From Perna viridis (taxonomy: Eukaryota): DNA of 64,000 nt. The notes beneath the pieces are model-generated. The model did not search any database. It was not told the origin of the DNA and saw only the letters and a program-made list of their open reading frames with translations. The stretch covers positions 40,548,001 to 40,612,000 of the forward strand of contig CM074512.1 of NCBI GenBank assembly GCA_037379345.1, written 5' to 3'. Shown piece after piece: positions 28,592-44,715 of this stretch. The position numbers and the translations under genes were made by a program. Positions within the stretch are counted from its first letter, which is position 1; each line of letters opens with the position of its first letter.

Positions 28592-29641
28592 TTAAGCGTC
28601 TATATCTCTAGTGACCAACTTTAATTTGCAATCTTATCATCAAATACAGTTTCTATAAGGCCTCCTGCAAGAGTTCCAATAAAAAAATGGGATTAAGAAA
28701 TTCATGAATCACTTACTATAAGCTTCTGTCTAATTTTAAGGCAGAGCTGTACTTTGGTAAGAGATAAGGCAGAGTATGATATTGAGTTCTGAAAATAATA
28801 CCAAGACTGATTAAAACTACCATAGAGTTTCTTAATTATAACTGGTAGTAATGAGAAATGTTTTGACGACAAGTGTTTAAAAATCTATAAACAAGTATTC
28901 CAACTGAGAATAGTCAGTTCTGTGACTTTCAACCTGTATTAACATGAGATTCAATACACATAATTTTATGTCAGAGGCAAAGTCTTAAACTATATTAGTA
29001 GACTACATAATTAATACAATTAATAATTGGATGAAGTTCCTGAAAACTAAGGCACCATGATGATTTACCATAAAAAATACTAGCTTTGTCTAACCCTACA
29101 ATACTGCTTTGGTTTTAATTAATTCTTACAGTTAATCTAAGTATGAATGAAACACATTGTATCATAACTCAGTTTCACATTATGATAAGAGACTACCAGT
29201 AAATGATTTTTTTCTTTGTCTTTTTTTTTTGTGTGATATCAAAAGTGAATGAGAGTGAAACCCATCGCATCTGGAGTAAGAACAAATATCACCATACTTA
29301 GAATGAAAATCCATCACTGTTGAAAAGAGAAGAAACTCCATCACTGCTGGAAAGAGACCACAAGACATCACTGCTTGATACATTAGTTCATACCAAGTAA
29401 AAACATTTGTAAGTTTCTTCCGTCATTATCTCCTCACACCTCTCAATTTGAAGATACTATAATGTCAAGTCTGGCGTAACTCTCTTTACTGATATTTTAA
29501 GACACATAAGCACCATCTAAGACCACAAGTCAAATGCTTCATTACAAGTATCAATTATCATTACCATGATAAGAGTGAGTCTTTAAAAAGCTACTGAACA
29601 ATGTCTTTTTTTTCAAATCTTGACAAAATTAAAAGTACTTG

Positions 29642-31534
29642 CATAGTCATTAAGTAATGTCACTGTATAGCACATAGTCATCAAGTAATGTCACTGTATA
29701 ACACATAGTCATCAAGTAATGTCACTGTATAACACAGTCATTCTGTAATGTCACTGTATAACATGTAGTCATTAAGTAATGTCACTGTATACAGTCATTA
29801 AGTAATGTCACTGTATAGCACAGTCATCAAGTAATGTCACTGTATAACACATAGTCATCAAGTAATGTCACTGTATAACACATAGTCATTCTGTAATGTC
29901 ACTGTATAACATGTAGTCATTAAGTAATGTCACTGTATACAGTCATTAAGTAATGTCACTGTATAACACAGTTATAAAGTAATGTCAATGTATAACAGAC
30001 AGTGATAAAGTAATGACACTGTATAACACATAGAGATAAAGTAATGTCACTTTATAACATGTAGTCATCAAGAAATGTCAGTGTCTAACACATAGTCGTT
30101 AAGTAATGTCACTGTATAACACGAAGTCATTAAGTAATGTCACTGTATAACACATAGTCATAAAATAATGTCACTGTATAATACAGTAATAAAGTAATGT
30201 CATTGTATAACACAGTGATGAAGTAATGTCACTGTATAACAGACAGTGATAAAGTAATGTCACTGTATAACACATAGAGATAAAATAGTGTCACTATATA
30301 ACACATAGAGATAAAATAATGTCACTGTATAACACATAGTTATCACGTAATGTCACTGTATAACACAGTGATAAAGTAATATCAGTGTATAACACGTAGT
30401 CATCAAGTAATGTCACTGTATAACACATAGTCATTAAGGAATGTCACTCTATAACACAGTGATGAAGTAATCTCACTGTATAACAGACACTGATAAAGTA
30501 ATGTCACTGTATAACACATAGAGATAAAGTAATGTCACTTTATAACATGTAGTCATCAAGTAATATCACTGTATAACACATATTATCAAGTAATGTCACT
30601 GTAGAATACAGTGATGAAGTAATATCAGTGTATAACACTTAATCATCAAGTAATGTCACTGTATAACACATAGTCATTAAGTAATGTCACTGTATAACAC
30701 AGTGATAAAGTAATCTCGCTGTATAACAGATAGTGATAAAGTAATGTCACTGTATAACAAATAGAGATAAAGTAATGTCACTTTATAACACATAGATATA
30801 AAGTAATGTCACTGTATAATACATAGTCATCAAGTAATGTCACTATATAACAAATAGGCATAAAGTAATGTCACTGTATAACACATAGTTATCAATTAAT
30901 GTCACAGTAGAACACAGTGATAAAGGAATATCTCTGTATAACACATAGTCATCAAGTAATGTCACTGTATAACACAGTCATTAAGTAATGTCACTGTATA
31001 ACACACAGTCATTAAGTTATGTCACTGTATAACAAATAGGCATAAAGTAATGTCACTGTAAAACACATAGTTATCAATTAATGTCACTGTAGAACACAGT
31101 GATAAAGTAATATCTCTGTATAACACATAGTCATTAAGTAATGTCACTGTATAACACATAGTCATTAAGTAATGTCACTGTATAACACACAGTCATTAAG
31201 TAATGTCACAGTATAACACAGTCATTAAGTAATGTCACTGTATAACACATAGTCATAAAGTAATGTCACTGTTTTAGTGTATAACACATAGTCATTAAGT
31301 AATGTGACTGTATAACACTTTGATAAAGTAATGTCACTGTATTGCACATAGTCATTAAGTAATGTCACTGTATAACACATAGTCATAAAGTAATGTCACT
31401 GTATAACACAGTGATAAAGTAATGCCACTGTATATCACGTAGTCATTAAAGTAATGTCACTGTATATTACGTAGTCATTAAAGAAATGTCACTGTATAAC
31501 ATGTAGTCATTAAGTAATGTCACTGTATAACACA
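29642..31534. repeat. Minisatellite, ~29-31 bp unit (gtcattaagtaatgtcactgtataacacata), about 60 copies
   Basis: Directly visible head-to-tail repeats; the array overlaps the stop codon of the EF-hand/CaaX gene. Confidence 0.97.
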
Positions 31535-31590
31535 AGTCTTCGACACTTCTTTGTTTTGTTTAAGTCCTGTCTTGAATAACTTGGATTTTC
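31520..31590 (-). CDS. EF-hand/CaaX gene terminal coding exon, ends in CaaX box CVIQ
   Basis: ttttgtag acceptor, phase 1; (G)KSKLFKTGLKQNKEVSKTCVIQ then TGA at 31522-31520. Confidence 0.88.
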
Positions 31591-31931
31591 CTACAAAAGA
31601 AATAAATATATCATTTCATTTGTCTATGGCCTTATAACAAAGTGTTGACATCACATTATACAGTCAAAATTATCTACCTTAGCAATACTGATTAAGCAAT
31701 ATTCGTTATTCTGTAACTTTTTTTTCATAAAGCAAAAAAATAGCTCAAAAGTAAAAATATGTTGTGAAAAGATGAAATTCCAAATCATTTTCTTTATATT
31801 TATAATTTTAATATATTTTTACAAAAATGTTAGAAACAGATTTTGATAAAAATGTTAAAATCAGGCATATTGTTTGATTTTGAATAAATACTGTCAAGAA
31901 CAAGTTAAATTGTATCCTTAAGCAAACATAC

Positions 31932-32022
31932 CTGACTTTTTGGTGATTTTATCTAAAACCAGTAGGTATTCAAAGAAATCTAATGTGTGATTATTATCTC
32001 GATCTACTTCATCTATAGCTTC
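31932..32022 (-). CDS. EF-hand/CaaX gene exon, EF-hand 2
   Basis: 91 nt, phase 0 to 1; EAIDEVDRDNNHTLDFFEYLLVLDKITKKS with loop DRDNNHTLDFFE. Confidence 0.9.
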
Positions 32023-32656
32023 CTGTATAAATATAAATAGAAGAATAAATATAGCTATACATTTTTTTTAATTTAACTTCACTACTTCTCCTGATTTTTC
32101 TGATTTAATCTTACAGCTACAATGCACACATTCAGCACTGACCATTTCATCAGCAATAAGGGGAGGAGGGCATTTATTCTTTTTGAAAAAAGAAATTAAT
32201 GTTCCAAAGTTTTGAAAAAAAAATTATTCATCCATTGAAAAAAAAATAATGATTCTTTATTTTCCAATTACTTAACAAGGTAGATTTTGCAAATAAAGAT
32301 ATTGATTTCAGTTGTTGCTTAAAAATAATAAATATTTTGCCCTGGCATGAAAAAAAATTCTTTCCCCAACACCAAATCCAAGCCACCACCTCCTTCAGAA
32401 TAAAAATGGTTAGTGCCTTAGTAATTTATCCTTAATTTTGTTTGATACTACAAGTAGTGCAAAAATGTTTACTACAAACTGAAAAAAAAAACACAAGTTA
32501 ATTTTTTTCAGCCATCATGCTTTCACATTATTACTTAACAGCTTATTTGAAATGGATTAACATGTAATACATTTTGTACTATTTTTAAACATTAATAAAA
32601 ATGTAAACTGAGTTGCAAGTCCTATATCAACAAATAGGCTTTAGAAAATGGTATAC

Positions 32657-32710
32657 CTCAATTTGATCAGGTGTAAACTGACAGCCAATAGAAGTAAGAA
32701 TCTTTGATAC
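32657..32710 (-). CDS. EF-hand/CaaX gene exon (inter-EF helix/linker)
   Basis: 54 nt, phase 0/0; VSKILTSIGCQFTPDQIE, resembling the calmodulin inter-EF linker. Confidence 0.88.
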
Positions 32711-32762
32711 CTGTATGAAATTGAATCATATTATAAAACAGCACAGAGATATATACATTTAA

Positions 32763-32933
32763 GGAGGTAGACATAGGTAAAGGAAACAACTCTTACAAAT
32801 CATTGGAATGTTTGTATTCAGCATTCTACATCAATCTCATGGATGAAAGTTTGATAAATATTGGTGAAATTGAATATGATACAAGTATATCACAGATTTC
32901 AAGAGTTATGTCCCTTACCCTAGGTCTACCTCC
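32763..32933. mobile_element. TTAA-flanked MITE (Kolobok-like)
   Basis: TTAA|GGAGGTAGAC.TAGG...CCTAGGTCTACCTCC|TTAA; purine termini with TTAA duplication. Confidence 0.75.
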
Positions 32934-33767
32934 TTAACTAAAAGTGAGACATGTAATTTGAATAATTTAAATAATTAATGATTTAAATAACTTTTACTGA
33001 TCAATTTTTGGGGGTAATGGAAAAAGACACTCAAGTGCATACTAAAACCTTGTTTTGTTTTGTTTTTTGTTCTTTTTTTTCATTTCTATGTCAAATATTT
33101 AATACATCACAATTAAATCAGAGTTCCTGGTAAGTCTAATCAAATTTAATTACTTGTTTTTCAGACCCTCCCTTTTTTCTGCAGAGGATGCCTCATTAGC
33201 CACATTTATTGCCCTATCAATGTAATAAAACCAAATAAGCACTTTCCTCATCATTTTTTCTGTATAGGAACAATGTATAAAGCTCCCATTTTTTAAAGGT
33301 CAATAAAAGAAATGACTTCCTATCTCATCAGTTTCAAGAAAAATGGTCAGAGAACCAAGAAATAAACTTGGTATAGCCTAACCTTCCTGTCTTTAAAATA
33401 TGTTCAATAGGTGATTAGTTAAAGTGTGGAACTAATATTTCTCTGGTTTACCATGAAGTGGGTAATTTTTGCAGCTGGCAAATTTCACAATTTGCTCTAT
33501 GAATATGGGTATCAAATGTTAACCGACTTCATTTTTTGTGTCTTCAGATTTAATAGTCGAAATTATAATAAAATATCTTGACTTAAATTTTGCAAACTTA
33601 TTTTTTGTGATTTCCCAAACCTCATGAATACAACGAAATTTAGAATCCCGCAAAGATTTCTTGCTATATGGTATCTTTTATTTATACTTATTGTTCCTCA
33701 TTTTAAGAAACAAGTAGGTAAGTGTGATTGGTGCATCAATAATTAACTGAACCATATATGGACATAC

Positions 33768-33836
33768 TTCACTTAAATCTAATGAACAATCGTGGTCGGT
33801 ATCATATTCTTTAAACTTTTTCCAATGATCTAAAAC
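33768..33836 (-). CDS. EF-hand/CaaX gene exon, EF-hand 1
   Basis: 69 nt, phase 0/0; VLDHWKKFKEYDTDHDCSLDLSE with a canonical 12-residue loop, DTDHDCSLDLSE. Confidence 0.9.
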
Positions 33837-34240
33837 CTGCGAGGAAAAATAAAGCATTAATTTTACATGTTTCATGATGTAAACTTAATTATTAGCCTTA
33901 ATATACCTCAGTCATTTACCTGGAATACAGTTTTACAAAATTTATCATTTATGAATTATCACCAACTGAAGAGAATTTTTTGGTGTTACTTCATTAATAT
34001 AGAACTGTTATGAAGTTGCTAGAAGCCATACACATCAAATGAAAAATCTTGTTTTTCTTGGCTTTAAACATTTTTCTTCAATCCTTTGTTACAAACAATA
34101 CACTAACTTGACAAAAAATTGATATAATCAAAATTTGGTCAAACTGGTGAAAATGCTTAGTGCAACATTTCATTTTCACAAGGTTTTGTTTCTTGCACCA
34201 TTTATGTCTATATGTTGCACTTAAACATTTAAAAACTTAC

Positions 34241-34329
34241 AAAGTTTTGAGCCATGTGTGGGAAGTGCATTAGATATGCCATACTGTTAATTCTTCCTGT
34301 ATGTGGATCTACAATAACCGGATTCTCAG
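34241..34329 (-). CDS. EF-hand/CaaX gene exon
   Basis: ttttcag / gtaagt; 89 nt, phase 1 to 0; ENPVIVDPHTGRINSMAYLMHFPHMAQNF. Confidence 0.85.
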
Positions 34330-34854
34330 CTGAAAAACACACAAATAAATAACTAAACATACAACTCAATTTCATACCAACAAGCCAATTGCTGACTTCA
34401 CAAAAAACTAATGTGAATTTTTTTTTAATTTACAAAAACTTGGGTGATTATTTTCAAATTTTATTTTTATTTCTTATTATGAAAAGGTAGCAGAATATTT
34501 GCACTACTATTTTACTTTTATATTAGGGAAACTGGTATGTTTGTATTACTTTTTTACACCAGTATGTTTGCACAACTTCCGATTGATACATATATACATG
34601 TATAATAAATCAAAATGCCCAGTAGATAGTAATACAATGTCAGGTAAGTAGTTAGGTCACTGACCCAATGACATTTTCCAATTTTTTTGTTTGTACTTTG
34701 AATCAATATCTTTTAGGCCATAAAAGAAATGTAATTAAAAATTTAATATACCAGTTATAATAAAAAGTTTGTCCAGCCATAAAGCAGTTAAACCCAGCAC
34801 TTTACTTTGAAATTCTTGTACCAAAGCTGGAACATAGTGGCTATTTGTTATCCA

Positions 34855-35035
34855 TGGCAGAGGACGCTTACCCTGCCAGTGCACCTGGTCCATGCATCAG
34901 TTTTTAGTGGAGTCTGAGTTGCTCATTTACTTTTGTTACTTTCTATGTATTATTTTGTGTTCTTTGTTGTGTTTGTCTGTTTTCCATGTCTGGTCCTTAT
35001 CCCTGGATTACATTCTTTTGATTTCCTCGATTACT
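34855..35035 (+). repeat. Common dispersed repeat (fragments also at 16061-16140, 35655-35720 and, reversed, 50740-50870)
   Basis: gtctgttttccatgtctggtc.tt.tccctggattacattcttttga is shared with 16063-16110; tgccagtgcacctggtccat is shared with 35658-35677. Confidence 0.6.
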
Positions 35036-35317
35036 TTTTCCAGTTTATCCATGATTGGCTAGGTCATGTAAATTTCCCTCTGGTTGTGATTTCGGTAATT
35101 TTGTTAATAATTTTGTATAAACATTTAAACAGTCCTTTAGCTCTTTAAGCAAATTAGAATGTAAAGAGCACCACAGATTTTAATGAGCAGTTATCATGCC
35201 ATGTAAAAATTTTCACATCCTGGATAGAAACTATTGAGATTGCAGAGTGATACACAGTAAATCTAGAAGCTGTTTCTAGGTCAGCAGAGGAGATTATGAA
35301 GGTACTACAACACTTAC

Positions 35318-35475
35318 AGACAGAAGCTAACTTTTTAGAGGGTATACTAGTAGTTGTGGTTTGTGTTGTCGTAGTATCTGTTACTGCTGATACCTCCCCA
35401 TTACTGTGTATTGTCTCTAACTTGCCTAATGATGCACCAATAGTAGGCAAAGGTTGGGAAGTAAAATCTGATGAT
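35318..35475 (-). CDS. EF-hand/CaaX gene exon (S/T-rich linker)
   Basis: 158 nt, phase 2 to 1; SSDFTSQPLPTIG...TDTTTTQTTTTSIPSKKLASV; gtaagt donor. Confidence 0.8.
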
Positions 35476-35912
35476 CTAAAAAAGCAACATAAAAACTCTA
35501 ACATGTTATACAACTTTTATAAAAATAAAGAATTAGTAGCCTTTGTATCATTGTGTCAATAAGACCATGACAATTAGGTATAGTCTTTCATTCCATACAG
35601 GTATTTTTCTAGTTTTTGTCATAGTTATTTTTTTAAATCTCTTCATTAAGCTAATGTTGCCAGTGCATCTGGTCCATACTTCCATTTTTTTTTTAATTCC
35701 TGGTTGCTCATTCATGCTTTAGTTTCTGTGTATTCTTTTTTTATTTGTGTTAAAATAAGTTTTTTTTCTGATTTCTTGGTCTAGTCTTTGACCAAGAAAT
35801 TGATTACACCATTTCCTAATCTATTCATGGTCTCCTTGCTTTAACATAATATTCTCCATAACAAAATATACTAACAAGAGAGTGCTTTGCAATATTGAGT
35901 GATGTAACTTAC

Positions 35913-35971
35913 TTTAAGGAGGGTAATGAGGCTTGTTTTGACAATCTTTTCAGTTTTCTTACTTTTAGTTC
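35913..35971 (-). CDS. EF-hand/CaaX gene exon
   Basis: ttttcag / gtaagt; 59 nt, phase 0 to 2; ELKVRKLKRLSKQASLPSL. Confidence 0.85.
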
Positions 35972-36433
35972 CTGAAAAAGAGAAACAAAAGAACAAGTAG
36001 AAAGTATGTTTTAAATTTAGAAAAAACAATCTGTTGATAGGAAAAAATGTGGAAACAATATTCAAAACTAAAAGGTCAGCTACCAGTGATGACAGCAGAC
36101 CTTCACTTTCAATCTCATCAAAACTGTTTACCATTAGTTGGATTATCTCCCCTTTCAGTATTCTGGCATTAATTATCCTGATTCTTCATAACTACATATA
36201 AACCTTAACATTCCTTTAAGATTTCATGTAAGTCAATATGCAGTTTAGTAGGGTTGTATGGCCAGACAAACAGATAAGGGGACTCTCTGTTTGGGGTATA
36301 ATAAAATAACTGAAAATATTTGAGAAGTACATTTGTATAATCACATTTTCATCAAATATAGCAAGAAGGCTTAGAAAATACTTTAAAAAGAGCTACAACT
36401 GAAACTTCACTATATTATTGTATCAGTACAAAC

Positions 36434-36593
36434 CTTATCAAAGTATGTAAAATGAGGAGGAAGCATCATTCTGACAGAGGCAAGTTTCCCTTCAGAAGCA
36501 CCATCAAATATTTTTTCCACATTCTTAGTCAGTTTCACAAAATCTGGGTCTCGAATCTGTTCCTCTTCCTTGTAAAACTTTTCACTTAATATA
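36434..36593 (-). CDS. EF-hand/CaaX gene exon
   Basis: 160 nt, phase 2 to 0; ILSEKFYKEEEQIRDPDFVKLTKNVEKIFDGASEGKLASVRMMLPPHFTYFDK. Confidence 0.85.
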
Positions 36594-36940
36594 CTAAAAC
36601 CCAAAAATATTACAGTAACTTTTTGTGTATAAATGTCCCACTACTATTTTTCTTTGTCATAATTTACACTTAAGTTACATTTAAAAAAATAATATTATTT
36701 TTGAATGACGGAAAGAAATACAGATACACTGATTGGACTAAATTCTAGCCTGAGATAACTTTACTTTTATTAAAAGGTCATAAATCCACACAGCAAAGTA
36801 GATTGAAGTAAGTTATTCAGAACTTGAACCTCTTATAACGCTGCTCTGTTATAAGTCTATAAAAGGTCAAATATATCTTTGTTTATTATGTTCATGTGTT
36901 CCAAGTTTTATAGTGATGAGTCACCAACTTCATAAAAAAA

Positions 36941-37280
36941 GATTGATTGATTGATAGAAAGACTGACTGGAGTTTAACATCCTATGGCAAATATTTCATG
37001 CATTTCAGGATCAGAAAATTTCATTGATCCAACAGACCTTGCCTTGTACTAGTCCCACAAATTGAGTTTGTTATTGTTAATGTACTGGTAGTAACTCTCT
37101 GAATCAACAACCTACAACACAGGTACCACCCCACTCAGACATATTATTATGACACCAAGGCCAACCAATTGTAATTTTATCTCCTATATGCCACATGCTT
37201 GGCAGAGAAATAGTAAATAACAATTGTTATGTCTCAGAAGCAGATCAAATCCACTATTTCACTTACTTGAGATGAGCACA
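36941..37280 (-). mobile_element. Degenerate SINE (Nin-domain-like) with (CAAT)n tail; tail fragment also at 18903-18970
   Basis: (gatt)n...caaatatttcatgcat.tcagga tail shared with 18903-18970; decayed core atgc...tgcttggcagagaaa.agtaaata resembles bivalve Nin-SINEs (recognised from memory). Confidence 0.45.
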
Positions 37281-37378
37281 TTATCACAAGAAAAAAGCCT
37301 AAATTTTAAACCTCCATGTAAGTAGTAACAAATGTATACACAGATTGGAATTTTAAGTTTAAAATTGCAATTTCTTAC

Positions 37379-37514
37379 TTAATATCTGTTCTTATTCCCC
37401 CAAGGATACCCATGACAACTTTTTGTTCATTGTAGAACTGATCCTCCAGATGTGCTATATCTTTATCCTTTATATAGATATCCCGTTTTAATCTCTGCAC
37501 TTCATTGCTTTCTC
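37379..37514 (-). CDS. EF-hand/CaaX gene exon
   Basis: 136 nt, phase 1 to 2; ESNEVQRLKRDIYIKDKDIAHLEDQFYNEQKVVMGILGGIRTDI. Confidence 0.85.
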
Positions 37515-37820
37515 CTAGAATTATAATCACAGAAAAAAAGGCTGTTATAATAACATCTATTTAACAGAGAATACTTGAAGTTGTTTAATTTTTTTGGATC
37601 TGAATTTTGCTTCTCGAAGTTTCTTCCAAGTTTATTGTTATTAAAGTTCAAAAATACTTGTTTAACTTAATCATTATTTTTACCAATCATCAGAAAAAAA
37701 ATTCCCAACTGTACTGTAAAAAATAATGAAATAACAAAAAAAAGAACTTCCACAAATATTTTTATTTTAAAATTATATTTGCAACAAGATAGTGTTTCTA
37801 AAGACTTTTCCAATCTTTAC

Positions 37821-37883
37821 CATCTTTTGGTAAGTCAAATTCATCCTTCAGTACATCAAGGATTGATGATACTTTAAAACAAT
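37821..37883 (-). CDS. EF-hand/CaaX gene exon
   Basis: 63 nt, phase 1/1; CFKVSSILDVLKDEFDLPKD. Confidence 0.7.
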
Positions 37884-39029
37884 CTATTACCATAGAAACA
37901 AGTAAGAATGTTTTAAAAGGAGTGTAGAAATTTGTAGAACTAATTTGACCAGCTTAAATACCATATCCAATATAATTGTCGTCGTATTGATCAGTTTTTT
38001 CTTGATTTGGGGTAAAATAGCATAAATAATCACAGTAAAACCATGACAAAATACATGTACAACTTATATAATGGATTTAATATTTGGTGAAATACCACAA
38101 AAAAAAAAGAACAGGTGTTTAAATGCATAAGCTTGACCTTGGGAATAAAAATGGTTATTCCAAAGATAAATACACTCAAAGCTTAAATATTTAAAGGCTG
38201 TTTTATATTTTGCACATGTATAAAACATAACTTCATCTTTTTGTTTATACCAATTACAAGGTAAGGTATCAAAGACAACTTTCATTAAGACACTGATATT
38301 AGCAACCTGATATATGATGCTTCTTCTTTTGGGTCAATACATGTAATTCATAAATAAACTTTAAAATTGTAAAATGTTGTAAAATTATTGCAACAGCCAA
38401 TGGGTTGGAATTAGGAAATAACCCTTACACGAGGACGGTAAGTTTTATTTTAAAAAAACTTTTGAAACATAATAAAAAAACTGAAGTACATTGTGTTAGT
38501 GTTTTAGAGAGTGTATTCATATGAATATATTAATTAAAAAATATTATGCATTTCTATAAGCAGTTTTGCTTTGCTTCTGAAATGAAGTACCAGTATTATA
38601 TATTGAAGTTAACATAAATTAAAAATGAATAAACTAATTTGATTTATATGCAGTTAACTAAATGACTTTTCAGCTACAAAAGAAATAATCTATAAGGAAA
38701 AAGTAAGAATAAAAAGGTTTACTACATTACTACATCTACATCTGTCGAAAATCAAGCAAAGAGAGTAGCATCAAGTCAAAATCTAGGATCAACACACACC
38801 AATATTTTATTTATAAATTATCCTATACACCATTGATTTGACTGCCAAAAACTAGACAAAATTTCTTAGCTGCAAGTTCAATTTATTTTTAGATTTATAC
38901 ATTTATGACTATAAAAGAAAAATATAGTAACACATAAATCCATAGTTGATAAGAACTTGTCCAGGATGTTGACTTTAATAGATCCATAATTGTATTGCAG
39001 CAAGAATATTCTACACAATTTGTTTTTAC

Positions 39030-39053
39030 CTTCTTCTCCATCAACACAGTCCT
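39030..39053 (-). CDS. EF-hand/CaaX gene 24-nt microexon
   Basis: ttatag / gtaaaa; symmetric phase 1/1; (E)DCVDGEE. Confidence 0.55.
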
Positions 39054-39495
39054 CTATAAAGTTTAAAATGCTTTTGTTGTAATATTGACAATTTCATCTT
39101 TTAACATATGCATGTTAGAACAAATATAAAACAGTTTGAAATCAATTGTGCACTTTTTGACTGTGAAAATCAAAATTTAAATAAAGCCTCAAAACCACTT
39201 GTAATGTCTTTACAATAACTCTCATTACTGACATATATTTTGATTGAGCCAAAATAAAGTAATTGTGTCATTCCAGTTCCCCAACCATACTTTTGTTTCC
39301 AACACCAACCCTTTACATTTTACTGACAATTGAAAAAAATAAATCTGGAAACAATGAAAATATAATAAAATGATTTTGTAAAATAAAATGTTTTTCCTAC
39401 CTTCCTTTCCTAATTTTTTTAGGTGAAAAAGGAAACCTGCAATTAATTCATTTCAGCCTTAAGCTTTTGACCTTTTCTCAATACTAGTCACCTAC

Positions 39496-39553
39496 CTCCA
39501 ATGCCAAGTCTTTCTTGTTTCAACTTTAACATTTTATTCTGGTCATCAATGCA
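39496..39553 (-). CDS. EF-hand/CaaX gene exon
   Basis: tttcag / gtaggt; 58 nt, phase 0 to 1; CIDDQNKMLKLKQERLGIG. Confidence 0.8.
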
Positions 39554-40072
39554 CTGAAATTAGACAAACCAAAAATATGTATGACTCCCTACCGCAGAAC
39601 AATAGTATAAGCTGGAAAAAAACCATTTACATGAATTTCATATATGAATCAAAAGCATTTAAATTCTGTTCCAAAGTTCATTAGAAATGTGTATAAATCC
39701 AACCATTATAAAATGTGTGAATACATCTTTTCCATTAAATTCATTATAATTGAAATTTGCATGAAAATCTCAATTAACTTATATAAACTTAAAATGTAAT
39801 GGCATTTTCCTTCACTTGTGCATAGTTTAAATTGAACATTCCATTCTAGAACATCAAGCTTTTGTCTAACTAAATCTATTCAGATTTTCACTTTTCACCT
39901 TCTCATTGATACATGGTCTACTGTAAAAACATATATGATTTCACAAATAAAAAATAAAATATAAAATGGCCACTGAAATCATGAAGAATGAATCCTAAAA
40001 TCCAGGTAAACAGGTAACCACAAATAAAATATTACCTTCACCATATAGACTTGATATATCATATTTACTTAC

Positions 40073-40142
40073 AGACAGTCTTCTAGATGCTCTCTGTTTA
40101 CTGGCCTGTAATTCCATGATCTGTTCTTCCAATTCTTCTATT
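40073..40142 (-). CDS. EF-hand/CaaX gene exon (coiled coil)
   Basis: 70 nt, phase 2 to 0; IEELEEQIMELQASKQRASRRLS; gtaagt donor. Confidence 0.85.
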
Positions 40143-40242
40143 CTAAATCACATCAGAAATTTTACTCATATTTTTGTAGCCTAAATGACAAAATCTCTTA
40201 CTAAAATTACTATGCTGTTTACTATGCATTTTCAAAAGGAAA

Positions 40243-41117
40243 AGTGTGAGAGGTACTGATATTCATAAACTGGAAGTCATTAATGCATTACAAAGCTGAC
40301 AGTGTGAGAGGTACTGATATTTATAAACTGGAAGTCATTAATAGACTACAACGATGATAGTGTGAGAGGTTCCAATATTTATAAACTGGAAGTCATTAAT
40401 ACATTACAAAGCTGACAGTGTGAGAGGTACTGATATTCATAAACTGGAAGTAATTAATACATTACAAAGCTGACAGTGTGAGAGGTACTGATATTCATAA
40501 ACTGGAAGTAATTAATACATTACAAAGCTGACAGTGTGAGAGGTACTGATATTTATAAACTGGAAGTCATTAATAGACTACAACGATGACAGTGTGAGAG
40601 GTTCCAATATTTATAAACTGGAAGTCATTAATACATTACAAAGCTGACAGTGTGAGAGGTACTGATATTCATAAACTGGAAGTAATTAATACATTACAAA
40701 GCTGACAGTGTGAGAGGTACTGATATTCATAAACTGGAAGTAATTAATACATTACAAAGCTGACAGTGTGAGAGGTACTGATATTTATAAACTGGAAGTC
40801 ATTAATAGACTACAACGATGACAGTGTGAGAGGTTCCAATATTTATAAACTGGAAGTCATTAATACATTACAAAGCTGACAGTGTGAGAGGTACTGATAT
40901 TTATAAACTGGAAGTAATTAATACATTACAAAGCTGACAGTGTGAGAGGTACTGATATTTATAAACTGGAAGTCATTAATAGACTACAATGATGACAGTG
41001 TGAGAGGTTCCAATATTTATAAACTGGAAGTAATTAATACATTACAAAGTTGACAGTGTGAGAGGTACTGATATTCATAAACTGGAAGTCATTAATATAC
41101 TACAAAGCTGACAGTGT
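40243..41117. repeat. Intronic minisatellite, 58-bp unit, ~15 copies
   Basis: agtgtgagaggtactgatattcataaactggaagtcattaatacattacaaagctgac repeated with period 58. Confidence 0.97.
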
Positions 41118-41151
41118 TAACTCAGAATAGTCTTTTGCAACAAAGTCTTAC

Positions 41152-41223
41152 TTTTTATTGGCATTCTCCAGTAGCTTCTCCTTCTCCTTTTCATTCAGCT
41201 GTACATTTTTATCTCTAAGTAAT
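41152..41223 (-). CDS. EF-hand/CaaX gene exon (coiled coil)
   Basis: 72 nt, phase 2/2; LLRDKNVQLNEKEKEKLLENANK. Confidence 0.85.
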
Positions 41224-42099
41224 CTGCAACACAATAAAATTTATGTAACCAACTAAAAATTATCAATATAATGAAACATAAATCATAGTAAGGACAACAC
41301 AATCTCCATAAAAAAATGACAACTGTAATACTGATCTTTGGCCTACAGTATTGAAACATCTTGATTCAAAACATTTATTAGGAATACTTCTAAGCATATG
41401 CTAAGTTTGATCAATATTCCTTGAAGGCTTTTGGTTTTAGTATGTTTAAAAGGATGTTACAGACAGGCTTACAAAAGTTTTGATTGAGGAATGGATAGTA
41501 GGTTTTAGATAAGTGGATAATATTCTTCTTAAGTACCAGTCAGTATAAAATTCAGACTGCCAATGGCAAAGTGATTCATGGTGAAGAAAAACCCACCTAA
41601 CAAACCATGCTTTTTCAGTCTACATATGCTGTACTTTCACATAACAAAAATCTTTTCTGCATTCAGATCTGCACTTTTTACAAAATTATGCATTCATCTC
41701 CCTTTAAAATCAACCAAGTCAAGCCAAATCACGAACGACAACTCTTGTAAAGCGCTAATTCCATGTACAATCTATATAAATTTTATCTCAAAGGCTCAAC
41801 CCCAAATGAAAAACTAAGACTGGTTATCTGATCTAGAACAGTTTCTGAACAAGAAATAAAACTGAGATCCATGGGTTCTTGACATGCATAAATCACCTCC
41901 TGTCTTATTTTTATAAAGACTGGTACTTCAAAAGTCATATTCATGAACCAGTTGTCTTACAACCCTCAAAATACGTATCAAGATTTTGCGTAATAGAATT
42001 GAACTTTTTCAAATAAAGCAATGATACTTTCAAGATGGAATTACCTTCAGAATAAATTTTACAAACCCTGGAATCTAAAAGGTTGATGTGACAACTTAC

Positions 42100-42238
42100 T
42101 CAGTAATTTTACTATTTTTCTCCTCAACCATTTTCTCCATCAGTGTGACTTTCCCCTGTAACTTGGCAAACTCTAACTTTCTATCTGCATTCTCTCTCTT
42201 CTCATCTAGCAGCTGCTGATAAAGGTCTGTTGTTTTGG
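42100..42238 (-). CDS. EF-hand/CaaX gene exon (coiled coil)
   Basis: 139 nt, phase 1 to 2; KTTDLYQQLLDEKRENADRKLEFAKLQGKVTLMEKMVEEKNSKIT; gtaagt donor. Confidence 0.85.
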
Positions 42239-43692
42239 CTTTAGAATACAAATTAAGTAAAATAACAAAATAAATACATGAAAAAAAGTAAAAAGCATAT
42301 CTCTAAGTATGGTAGCATTTTGAGACACAGAAATCCTAACATAAGAATACAGATATTTCTATTTTCACATGATATTTACATACACAAGAATGTAATTTGA
42401 CAGCCATCTTTTGTAGTTAAGTAGCACTCCACATGCAAATTGTGATTCATGGTTGGGGAGCGTACATATTTTCATTTTTGATATTTTGTTTAAAATGTTA
42501 TAGTAAACAGAAATTAACATGAGACTTTTCATATAACCTTTGTTCTTAGAGGATAAAAATTATATAGAATGTACTGTAAAATTCAAAACTAAGGGAGATA
42601 ACTCTGTAAAGTGACACTAAAATACAATAGAAACTATAGGATTTTCCATGTGGATTATCCCCTAAGAGCAGACAGATCAGAATGAATGAATAACTATACA
42701 TTTCATCATATAGATCTATAAAACAACTTTATAACAAAAATAAAGATATGTAGCCTTTTTTTTTAGGTGTATCACATTCTACAGAATTTGCATGATTCTT
42801 ACATAGACTACTACTTTAATAATAGTTCTAGAAGCTTTAATGTTGGAATTACAAAAGGGTATATATAATTTCCTTCAATCACTAAAATGCCAGTAAAAGT
42901 TAATTTCTTGGTTTCAGGACATTTTTTTTTTATGAAAATCAATATTAATTGCCCTCTAAAATTTTTGTACTAACCCTTAATATGCAGAAACTTTATACAT
43001 ACAGTCTTGGGCTGTTTTCTGATTTTTGGGTTCTGGCAATTTTATTTTTAATTTTGGAAACCATAATTTGATTTCATATGCAAGGAGAGTGAATGTGCTT
43101 TGAAATGAGGCTATTTTATACAGAGTTTGATAAAAAATAAAGACTTGACAGCTGAATGAGAGGTCATGAGTTAAGAAGGCCACAAAAAGTTGTGATTTTT
43201 TTAGGGATAGGGCTCAGTTCTCAGTCTGTTGCAACAACAGCATGGATGCATAATGCTTCATTTCACCTGATTTCTATAGAATAATGATGTCTCTCACCAT
43301 ATACTAACCACTTCTGGTTTTCGGCCAATCTGATGCCAAAAATTGCGAAAAAAGCCTATTTTTTTCTCAAGAATAACTCCTCTGGAGTCCCCTGACCTTC
43401 CACTTACAACTGTTATGAACAATTCTTGGCTTAAATTACCATCAGAGGGAACAAGCTTTGGAAAATTGAACTTCGTACCCCTGGTGAGCACCACATCCAG
43501 TGAAAAATGAAAAAAAAAATGCCAAAAATGACCATTTTCAGACAACAGACCCATTTTCTCACACATGTGCACCCACCCACTTGGTTTACTAACTGAAAAT
43601 ATGTCAAAAATAAATGTTTTTAATGTTGTTTTACAAACCTGTTCCACTTTTTTTTTCACCAAATTTTAAAATTTTCAGTAACTGATACTCAC

Positions 43693-43744
43693 TTCTCATT
43701 TCTTCCAATTTGTGGTCCAACTGCTGCATATCATGGTGTTTCTC
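43693..43744 (-). CDS. EF-hand/CaaX gene exon (coiled coil)
   Basis: ttacag / gtgagt; 52 nt, phase 0 to 1; EKHHDMQQLDHKLEEMR. Confidence 0.85.
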
Positions 43745-43918
43745 CTGTAAAGCACAAATTTTAATTCAATAATAACCTGCTATATCCTGCAATGCTTCAG
43801 GGCAAGTGTTCTAGAATTCATGTTCCTGTTATTAGAAAGTAAATTTTCATGACTTAACCTTGGACAGGCTGAAAATTCTTAAGTTCTAAAAAACGTCAAA
43901 AGCAACTTTTTAATTTAC

Positions 43919-44086
43919 CTGAACTTTTTCCAGAATGCCTTCTCTACATTTGCAAAGAATTGACAGCAAGTCCATGATCAGTTTGGCTGGATTGTTCATT
44001 TCATCATCTGAGAAATTACCATCACAGTAGCCATAGTATTCCTCATATAGATACATATTCCTGATTTCCTTCCAGTGCATTTGATC
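43919..44086 (-). CDS. EF-hand/CaaX gene exon
   Basis: 168 nt, phase 0/0; DQMHWKEIRNMYLYEEYYGYCDGNFSDDEMNNPAKLIMDLLSILCKCREGILEKVQ. Confidence 0.8.
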
Positions 44087-44447
44087 CTGTTGGTAGTAAG
44101 TAAGATATCTAACTTGTGGGTTCATGTTGGAAGAAAACAAAGTTCTCCAATGTGCAAAATCAGAAATATCCATAACCCTAAAACCTTGTGTCTCACAGTG
44201 TTTGACCTTGGGAGAAAGTCTACTGTTTTGATTAAAAGCAAATATATTTCACATAAGAGTCTATCAAATATTCAAAGTGATAGGAGATTTTTTACTTGAA
44301 GACTTATTAACAACAAAACATTTTCTCTAAGAATATAATTTATATAAAAATACTTCTGTAATTTGTCATCACTTTTTCAACTGTTATCTTAACAAGAGAT
44401 AGCTGCCTTGACCACAAGGTTTCTTTTACTTAAAAAATGTACTTTAC

Positions 44448-44612
44448 CACATTATGTAACCGCTGCATGACATCTTGTGTATTGAAATAGGCACCATATT
44501 CAAAATCCTTCTCTAATATATCATGAAATATATCCAACAGCTGTTTGATAGCATCCTGTATTTTCCTGATATTTGCTTGTTTGAATATCAGCATGTTCAG
44601 TCGGCTTAGTCT
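44448..44612 (-). CDS. EF-hand/CaaX gene exon
   Basis: 165 nt, phase 0/0; RLSRLNMLIFKQANIRKIQDAIKQLLDIFHDILEKDFEYGAYFNTQDVMQRLHNV. Confidence 0.8.
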
Positions 44613-44715
44613 CTGAAAAGTAAATTGTTTCTATCAAATATAGATTTCACACAGATTTATTGTACCAAATAAATGCATTTGGAGTTGATTTTTCTGATCT
44701 CAAACTGCTCTTCAA

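What the first reader, a model, noticed from the sequence alone, without database searches (positions are those of the whole stretch)
29642..31534. A 3' UTR minisatellite built from the gene's own CaaX-stop codons
Seen: on the minus strand the repeat unit reads TGT GTT ATA CAG TGA CATTACTTAATGACTA, i.e. Cys-Val-Ile-Gln-STOP plus ~16 nt. The first unit (31534-31520) is the real C-terminus of the EF-hand protein, and about 60 further copies follow over ~1.9 kb. Established: CaaX ending in Q is a farnesyltransferase-type motif. Inference: either the CaaX/stop junction was tandemly amplified, or a pre-existing satellite donated a prenylation signal to the protein. Unequal crossover or gene conversion with variant units (TGCTATACAG, TTCTACAG, TTATAAAG) could swap or remove the prenylation signal. 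Array length could also change 3' UTR length or regulatory-site number between alleles.
Basis: partly seen in the sequence, partly recalled or inferred. Interest (0 to 1): 0.8.

Follow-up and report, generated by a model that had tools for sequence, protein, structure and literature searches.

The report
Minisatellite seeded by gene's CaaX-stop end
A 1.9-kb run of 62 copies of a 31-base unit begins at the last four codons and stop codon of a conserved, probably farnesylated calcium-binding protein gene of a mussel-like bivalve; relatives show the gene end came first and was copied, leaving the protein untouched, so this is a clear but ordinary case of minisatellite birth.

Summary
A 31-bp x 62 tandem array (29642-31538, minus strand) starts at the Cys codon of a CVIQ-stop, and its first unit matches the commonest full unit. 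The array is unique in the 723-Mb assembly and no transposable element flanks it. Homology confirms the terminal exon: a Mytilus galloprovincialis orthologue maps collinearly onto 17 window exons and ends ...SKACVIQ. Orthologues from oysters, scallops, a pearl oyster, gastropods and the brachiopod Lingula all end C-[VAS]-[VIL]-[QM]. The CaaX box is therefore ancient, and the idea that a satellite donated it is rejected. Five orthologous loci carry unique sequence after the stop, so the array is a lineage-specific amplification of a 31-bp seed spanning the stop codon. The first stop still ends translation, so the copies do not change the protein. Swapping of the CaaX by unequal exchange is unlikely, because unit homology reaches only 4 nt left of the Cys codon and the edge units 2-4 are not homogenised. 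Membership of the mature 3' UTR is inferred from the lack of any AATAAA before the array ends; it is not shown, because the contig evidence was patchy. The same gene holds a second private minisatellite in an intron. The scan had no earlier finding of this kind on other DNA. Low-to-moderate interest.

The parts
29642..31538 (-). Locus-specific minisatellite: 31-bp unit, about 62 copies, 1.9 kb
   Evidence: TRF; unit parse; all genome-wide matches fall here
31504..31534 (-). First unit: last four codons (CVIQ), the stop and 16 nt. Identical to four interior units
31520..31590 (-). Terminal coding exon (71 nt including the stop) encoding the basic tail and CaaX, ending ...VSKTCVIQ
   Evidence: AG acceptor and phase; tblastn to Mytilus P0020 residues 518-540, 74% identity
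31411..31503 (-). Edge units 2-4: divergent, two are 32 nt long, none keeps the Cys codon
   Evidence: a 176-nt contig from independent run X1 matches about 31337-31512 with no differences
31932..32022 (-). Exon with the second EF-hand loop (DRDNNHTLDFFE)
32657..32710 (-). 18-codon linker exon between the two EF-hands
   Evidence: AG/GT boundaries; tblastn
33768..33836 (-). Exon with the first EF-hand loop (DTDHDCSLDLSE)
29485..29490 (-). AGTAAA, first variant poly(A) hexamer after the array
   Evidence: hexamer scan
29114..29119 (-). ATTAAA, first strong poly(A) signal after the stop. No AATAAA between 31519 and 27500
   Evidence: hexamer scan
28965..29641 (-). Single-copy 3' flank of the array; not a transposable element
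   Evidence: own-genome DNA search

Best explanation
This is a lineage-specific minisatellite. It arose when a 31-bp segment spanning the stop codon of a conserved gene (four CaaX codons, TGA and 16 nt of 3' UTR) was duplicated in tandem, and it then grew to about 62 units by slippage and unequal exchange. The gene encodes a coiled-coil, EF-hand-pair protein with a basic tail and a farnesyl-type CaaX box. The first stop codon stays in place, so every later copy is untranslated and the protein is unchanged, which is why the array is tolerated. The array probably lies in the 3' UTR and lengthens it by about 1.9 kb. Shown here: the array, its uniqueness, the reality of the terminal exon, the antiquity of the CaaX, and the absence of the array in relatives. 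Inferred: the growth mechanism and membership of the mature 3' UTR (about 0.6 on its own).
For: Array and unit register. The repeat is found only at this locus in 723 Mb, its flank is single-copy and the gene is single-copy. Terminal exon and gene model: Mytilus P0020 residues 4-540 map collinearly onto 17 window exons. CaaX is conserved in Ostrea, Saccostrea, Crassostrea, Magallana, Argopecten, Pecten, Pinctada, Mytilus, Physella, Biomphalaria and Lingula. In M. galloprovincialis the last 15 nt of the coding sequence plus the next base match the start of the unit consensus, yet unique sequence follows. No array starts at the stop codon in 5 orthologous loci, and no relic of a second unit is detectable. 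An independent run has a contig matching array units 2-7 exactly, so at least the proximal array is not an assembly artefact. There is no AATAAA from the stop to 4 kb downstream; the first ATTAAA lies 520 bp past the array. A second private minisatellite in an intron of the same gene shows that such births are common here.
Against: No RNA evidence for this species. The laid contigs covered exons and introns alike at low depth, showed no exon-exon joints, and the runs' RNA status is only a guess. The total array length rests on a single assembly. The source of the non-coding half of the unit cannot be traced, because the 3' UTRs do not align with Mytilus. No genome of a closer relative was available, so the time of origin is bounded only by the split from Mytilus.
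Confidence: 0.82

Rival explanations
1. A pre-existing satellite lay next to the gene, and the reading frame ran into it and took the CaaX and stop from a repeat unit.
For: The first unit cannot be told apart from interior units.
Against: The C-xx-Q/M end is conserved across bivalves, gastropods and a brachiopod, and the whole basic tail aligns. Mytilus has the same 15 nt with no array. The repeat occurs nowhere else in the genome.
Confidence: 0.02
2. The array is real DNA but is not part of the mature mRNA. Cleavage and polyadenylation occur at or near the first units using a weak hexamer, so the array is simply downstream intergenic DNA.
For: Weak variant hexamers lie in the edge units (AATATA at 31468, AATACA at 31343). 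The Magallana orthologue is encoded on roughly 2-kb Logan contigs, which suggests short UTRs in relatives. No spliced RNA contig reaching the array was seen.
Against: No AATAAA or ATTAAA lies between the stop and the end of the array. Sixteen transcriptome-sized runs from six studies hold 5-23% of the words after the stop.
Confidence: 0.3
3. The array has a selected function in the transcript, for example as many binding sites for an RNA-binding protein or microRNA, or as a bank of cryptic splice acceptors (each unit ends a pyrimidine-rich run in CAG).
For: Unit positions 9-23 are nearly invariant. Each unit carries an acceptor-like run.
Against: No Rfam match. Folding is no better than shuffled sequence, z = -0.52. 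Units differ by about 17% and indels are frequent. The array is absent in all relatives examined. Comparable private arrays sit in introns of this gene and of its Pecten orthologue.
Confidence: 0.1
4. The array, or most of its length, is an assembly artefact.
For: Only one assembly was examined. The DNA runs of the source sample hold 24-66% of the sampled words, not all of them.
Against: An independent 2020 run has a 176-nt contig identical to units 2-7. Runs from seven studies hold part of the stretch. The units carry an ordered, non-periodic set of variants, unlike a collapsed or stuttered assembly.
Confidence: 0.04

Closest known systems
3' UTR minisatellites (VNTRs), e.g. the 40-bp VNTR in the human SLC6A3/DAT1 3' UTR (from memory, not tested here)
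   Same: A locus-specific tandem array of units tens of bases long, located after the stop codon of a single-copy gene. Length variation would alter the UTR and not the protein.
   Different: Here the array starts inside the coding sequence, so its first unit supplies the last four codons and the stop. Transcription and polymorphism have not been shown.
Bivalve satellite DNAs and TE-borne tandem repeats (Helitron- or MITE-associated arrays; from memory)
   Same: An AT-rich tandem repeat in a bivalve genome.
   Different: Those families are dispersed over many loci. This 31-mer is confined to one locus and has single-copy flanks.
Partial tandem duplication of a terminal exon, as in the M. galloprovincialis orthologue (L015 20068-20212 and 20299-20443)
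   Same: It also spans the CaaX codons, the stop and the proximal UTR, and it leaves the first copy's reading frame intact.
   Different: Two copies of 145 bp, 231 bp apart, 98.6% identical and recent; not a 31-bp array.
Polybasic-CaaX calcium sensors such as plant CaM53 (from memory)
   Same: An EF-hand domain followed by a lysine-rich tail and a CaaX box.
   Different: This protein is about 540 residues with a long coiled coil, its X residue is Q (farnesyl type), and it is a family of molluscs and brachiopods with no experimental study found.

Membership tests
Minisatellite / VNTR | Head-to-tail copies of a 10-100 bp unit forming an array of 0.5 kb or more | tested here: met
   31 bp x 62.2 copies, 1897 bp
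Minisatellite / VNTR | Confined to one locus, as opposed to a dispersed satellite family | tested here: met
   All 32 matches of the 31-mer lie in the array. The 18-nt core gives 49 hits in the array and 5 elsewhere, against 8 for the reversed control
Minisatellite / VNTR | Copy number varies between individuals | not tested
Word shares do not measure length
Dispersed or TE-derived satellite DNA | Many genomic loci or TE flanks | tested here: not met
CaaX prenylation box (farnesyltransferase type) | Cys at position -4, aliphatic residues at -3 and -2, and X = A/M/S/Q at the C-terminus | tested here: met
   The window gene ends CVIQ-stop. The rule is stated in PMC9141697
CaaX prenylation box (farnesyltransferase type) | The motif is conserved in orthologues, which argues for function | tested here: met
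   CVVQ, CVIQ, CVLQ, CSVQ, CSIQ, CAVQ and CAVM across 12 or more taxa
CaaX prenylation box (farnesyltransferase type) | The protein is actually prenylated | not testable with these tools
   Needs metabolic labelling or mass spectrometry
EF-hand pair (PF13499) | Two canonical 12-residue loops about 24 residues apart, with a Pfam score above the cut-off | tested here: met
   Orthologues score 37-41 bits against a cut-off of 30. Window exons carry both canonical loops and the linker exon. The joined window protein was not searched
3' UTR element | Present in the mature polyadenylated transcript | tested here: inconclusive
   Contigs are patchy over exons and introns and show no joints. No poly(A) signal precedes the end of the array

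The most novel reading that the evidence does not exclude
The 3' end of this gene may be a recurrent duplication hotspot in mytilids: a 31-bp x 62 array here, and an independent 145-bp duplicate spanning CaaX and stop in M. galloprovincialis. Rare conversion from variant units (SVIQ, HVIQ and FVIQ lack the Cys; CVIL would be a geranylgeranyl type) into unit 1 could then produce alleles that switch the protein's lipid anchor on, off or to another type.
Probability: 0.04. Interest if true: 0.6.

Novelty: new member of a known kind. Interest (0 to 1): 0.25.

Why it matters
It is an unusually clear case of how a minisatellite starts. The seed overlaps deeply conserved codons, so the direction of events (gene first, repeat second) can be read directly, which is rarely possible for non-coding arrays. 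It also shows that a tandem duplication spanning a stop codon is neutral for the protein. In practical terms it flags a likely length-polymorphic marker and a possibly much longer 3' UTR in one bivalve lineage. It also confirms the C-terminus of an uncharacterised family of probably farnesylated calcium-binding proteins conserved in molluscs and brachiopods. No new mechanism is implied.

Tried and rejected
1. RNA evidence. The look-up of sequencing runs on the stretch after the stop returned only runs whose RNA status is a guess. Read laying on 31411-37410 was dominated by two dispersed intronic repeats, showed low patchy depth over exons and introns, zero depth on the exon at 36434-36592, and listed no exon-exon joints. 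It gives no verdict on transcription.
2. The joined spliced protein of the window was never built or searched. Exons were searched separately by reference and the gene model was checked by mapping a database orthologue onto the window.
3. Exon-by-exon Pfam gave only sub-threshold EF-hand hits, because the pieces are short.
4. Aligning the window's flank beyond the array with the Mytilus 3' UTRs found nothing significant, so the origin of the non-coding half of the unit is untraced.
5. A weak resemblance between the unit and exon sequence about 47 nt upstream (17 of 22 positions, shuffle p = 0.035) is treated as chance.
6. Rfam, RNA folding, three literature searches and earlier scan notes gave nothing relevant. 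One search call failed on a malformed term.
7. The look-up of encoding contigs had no record for the M. edulis protein.
8. I considered searching for ORFs encoded within the array to recover transcript contigs. I dropped it because k=31 assemblies must break at unit 1, which is identical to four other units.

Full report
OBSERVATION. Tandem Repeats Finder reports a single array at 29642-31538 with period 31, 62.2 copies, 83% matches and score 2297. Parsing the minus strand gives 62 units. Forty are exactly 31 nt; most of the rest are 29-nt variants ending TTTATCAC. The first unit (31534-31504) reads TGT GTT ATA CAG TGA followed by 16 nt. It differs from the 31-nt consensus only at position 24, which is tri-allelic in the array, and it is identical to four interior units. 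Read in the register of unit 1, 24 units would encode CVIQ-stop, 17 keep the Cys with another change (for example CVIL-stop, CAIQ-stop, CVIK-stop) and 21 lack the Cys codon (HVIQ, SVIQ, FVIQ, RVIQ and others).

IS IT A DISPERSED SATELLITE? No. In the whole 723-Mb, 46-contig assembly, the 31-mer with up to three mismatches occurs 32 times, always inside this array; the reversed control gives 0. The 18-nt core with one mismatch gives 49 hits in the array and 5 elsewhere, against 8 for the control. The 3' flank next to the array is single-copy. No Rfam family matches, and the RNA folds no better than shuffled sequence (z = -0.52).

THE GENE. On the minus strand, an exon at 31590-31520 follows an AG acceptor. 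It continues in phase from an exon at 32022-31932 that carries a canonical EF-hand loop. Upstream lie an 18-codon linker exon with clean AG/GT boundaries (32710-32657) and an exon with the first EF-hand loop (33836-33768). The longest exon (43919-44206) was used as the query in the exhaustive protein search. It returned 12 relatives, three of them full-length at 528-536 residues. Word searches seeded with these hits and a cluster look-up gave orthologues from Ostrea, Saccostrea, Crassostrea, Magallana, Argopecten, Pecten, Pinctada, three Mytilus species, the gastropods Physella and Biomphalaria, and the brachiopod Lingula. All are annotated as uncharacterised, as EF-hand domain-containing, or by a loose similarity name ("median body protein", or a leucine-rich-repeat name in Argopecten). 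Pfam finds only the C-terminal EF-hand pair, at 37-41 bits against a cut-off of 30. The M. galloprovincialis protein is the closest. Its residues 4-540 map collinearly onto 17 window exons at 43-89% identity per exon, and the terminal exon matches at 74%. The gene is single-copy in this genome.

THE CaaX IS ANCIENT. The orthologues end in CVVQ, CVIQ, CVLQ, CSVQ, CSIQ, CAVQ or CAVM, always after the same EF-hand pair and a lysine-rich tail. X = Q, like A, M and S, directs farnesylation, whereas L, I and F direct geranylgeranylation (PMC9141697). In Magallana gigas the same C-terminus is encoded on roughly 2-kb contigs from Logan run assemblies, a length that suits an mRNA; I did not examine those contigs.

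POLARITY. I fetched five orthologous loci: M. galloprovincialis, M. coruscus, Pecten maximus, Crassostrea virginica and Pinctada imbricata. In each, the CaaX and stop are followed by unique sequence, and TRF finds no array starting at or near the stop. In M. galloprovincialis the last 15 nt of the coding sequence plus the next base are identical to the start of the window's unit, yet the following sequence is unrelated. No relic of a second unit is detectable in the first 60 or 300 nt after the stop in any relative; the one exception is explained by M. galloprovincialis's own duplicate. The gene end therefore came first. A 31-bp seed spanning the stop was amplified in the window's lineage after it split from Mytilus. 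The alternative, that a satellite donated the prenylation signal, is rejected.

WHY IT IS TOLERATED, AND WHAT IT CANNOT EASILY DO. A tandem duplication whose left edge lies in the coding sequence and whose right edge lies in the UTR leaves the first copy's frame and stop intact, so the protein does not change. Unit homology extends only 4 nt (GACT) to the left of the Cys codon. Any in-register crossover, slippage or single-strand-annealing product therefore keeps the left, coding part of unit 1. A conversion tract covering those 15 nt would have almost no homology to anchor its left end. In line with this, units 2-4 are the most aberrant in the array: two are 32 nt long and none has a Cys codon. 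This is the usual signature of an array edge that does not take part in homogenisation. Swapping is not impossible, but it should be rare, and selection would oppose it given conservation of the motif from molluscs to brachiopods.

IS IT 3' UTR? This step is inferred. There is no AATAAA between the stop and 4 kb downstream. The first ATTAAA is at 29119, 520 bp past the array, and an AGTAAA is at 29490. Only weak variant hexamers lie in the edge units. Sixteen transcriptome-sized runs from six studies hold 5-23% of the sampled words after the stop, but their RNA status is only a guess. I laid four of them on 31411-37410. The bulk of the array was deliberately left out, because the tool turns away long repeats. 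Depth was low and patchy over exons and introns alike, one exon had none, and no exon-exon joints were listed. One 176-nt contig from an independent 2020 run matches units 2-7 with no differences. That shows the proximal array is not an artefact of this assembly, but it does not prove transcription. I put array membership of the mature mRNA at about 0.6.

CONTEXT. Private minisatellites are commonplace here. The same gene has a second one (58 bp x 15, 40243-41117) that is also unique in the genome and makes up 87% of a 1005-nt intron. The Pecten orthologue carries three intronic arrays of up to 2.9 kb. M. galloprovincialis independently duplicated a 145-bp piece spanning its CaaX, stop and proximal UTR, at 98.6% identity, and this duplicate is absent from M. 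coruscus. Two literature searches on this topic found no description of this protein family or of stop-spanning minisatellites in bivalves, and the scan's earlier notes hold nothing similar.

VERDICT. This is a new instance of a known kind of element, a locus-specific minisatellite. Its one notable feature is that the seed overlaps conserved codons, so its origin can be read unambiguously. No new mechanism is indicated. Interest 0.25.

Noticed in passing
window 40243-41117 (intron 41150-40146, minus strand): A second minisatellite in the same gene, 58 bp x 15 at 90% identity. It makes up 87% of a 1005-nt intron, starting 33 nt after the donor and ending about 100 nt before the acceptor. All 14 genome-wide matches lie inside it.
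   Followed up: partly
L015 20068-20212 and 20299-20443 (M. galloprovincialis orthologue): An independent, recent (98.6% identical) 145-bp duplicate of most of the terminal exon, the CaaX, the stop and 80 nt of UTR, plus a 25-nt partial copy between the two. It is absent from M. coruscus (L017).
   Followed up: partly
window 32753-32941 and 34857-35026: Two short intronic segments draw summed contig depths of 10^4 to 10^5, with many variant contigs, in all four runs. They are probably abundant dispersed SINE- or MITE-like repeats.
   Followed up: no
window 31520-44615, minus strand: The gene belongs to an uncharacterised family found in molluscs and brachiopods: a conserved N-terminal region, a coiled coil, an EF-hand pair, a basic tail and a CaaX ending in Q. 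Lingula's copy is named 'median body protein' by similarity only. No experimental study was found.
   Followed up: partly
L016 9027-9714, 11269-13046, 19015-21953 (Pecten maximus orthologue): Three large minisatellites inside the called gene span, so presumably intronic (33 bp x 21, 41 bp x 43, 34 bp x 87). This gene tends to accumulate arrays in other bivalves too.
   Followed up: no
L019 19382-22038 (Pinctada imbricata): An XPG-family gene neighbours the orthologue in Pinctada, as a first-reader note reports for this window (about 60.4-61.3 kb). This suggests conserved linkage.
   Followed up: no
window 31921-31931, minus strand: If the last intron is retained, the frame runs on from ...ITKKS through GMFA to a stop. 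The product would lack the basic tail and the CaaX, giving a possible non-prenylated isoform.
   Followed up: no
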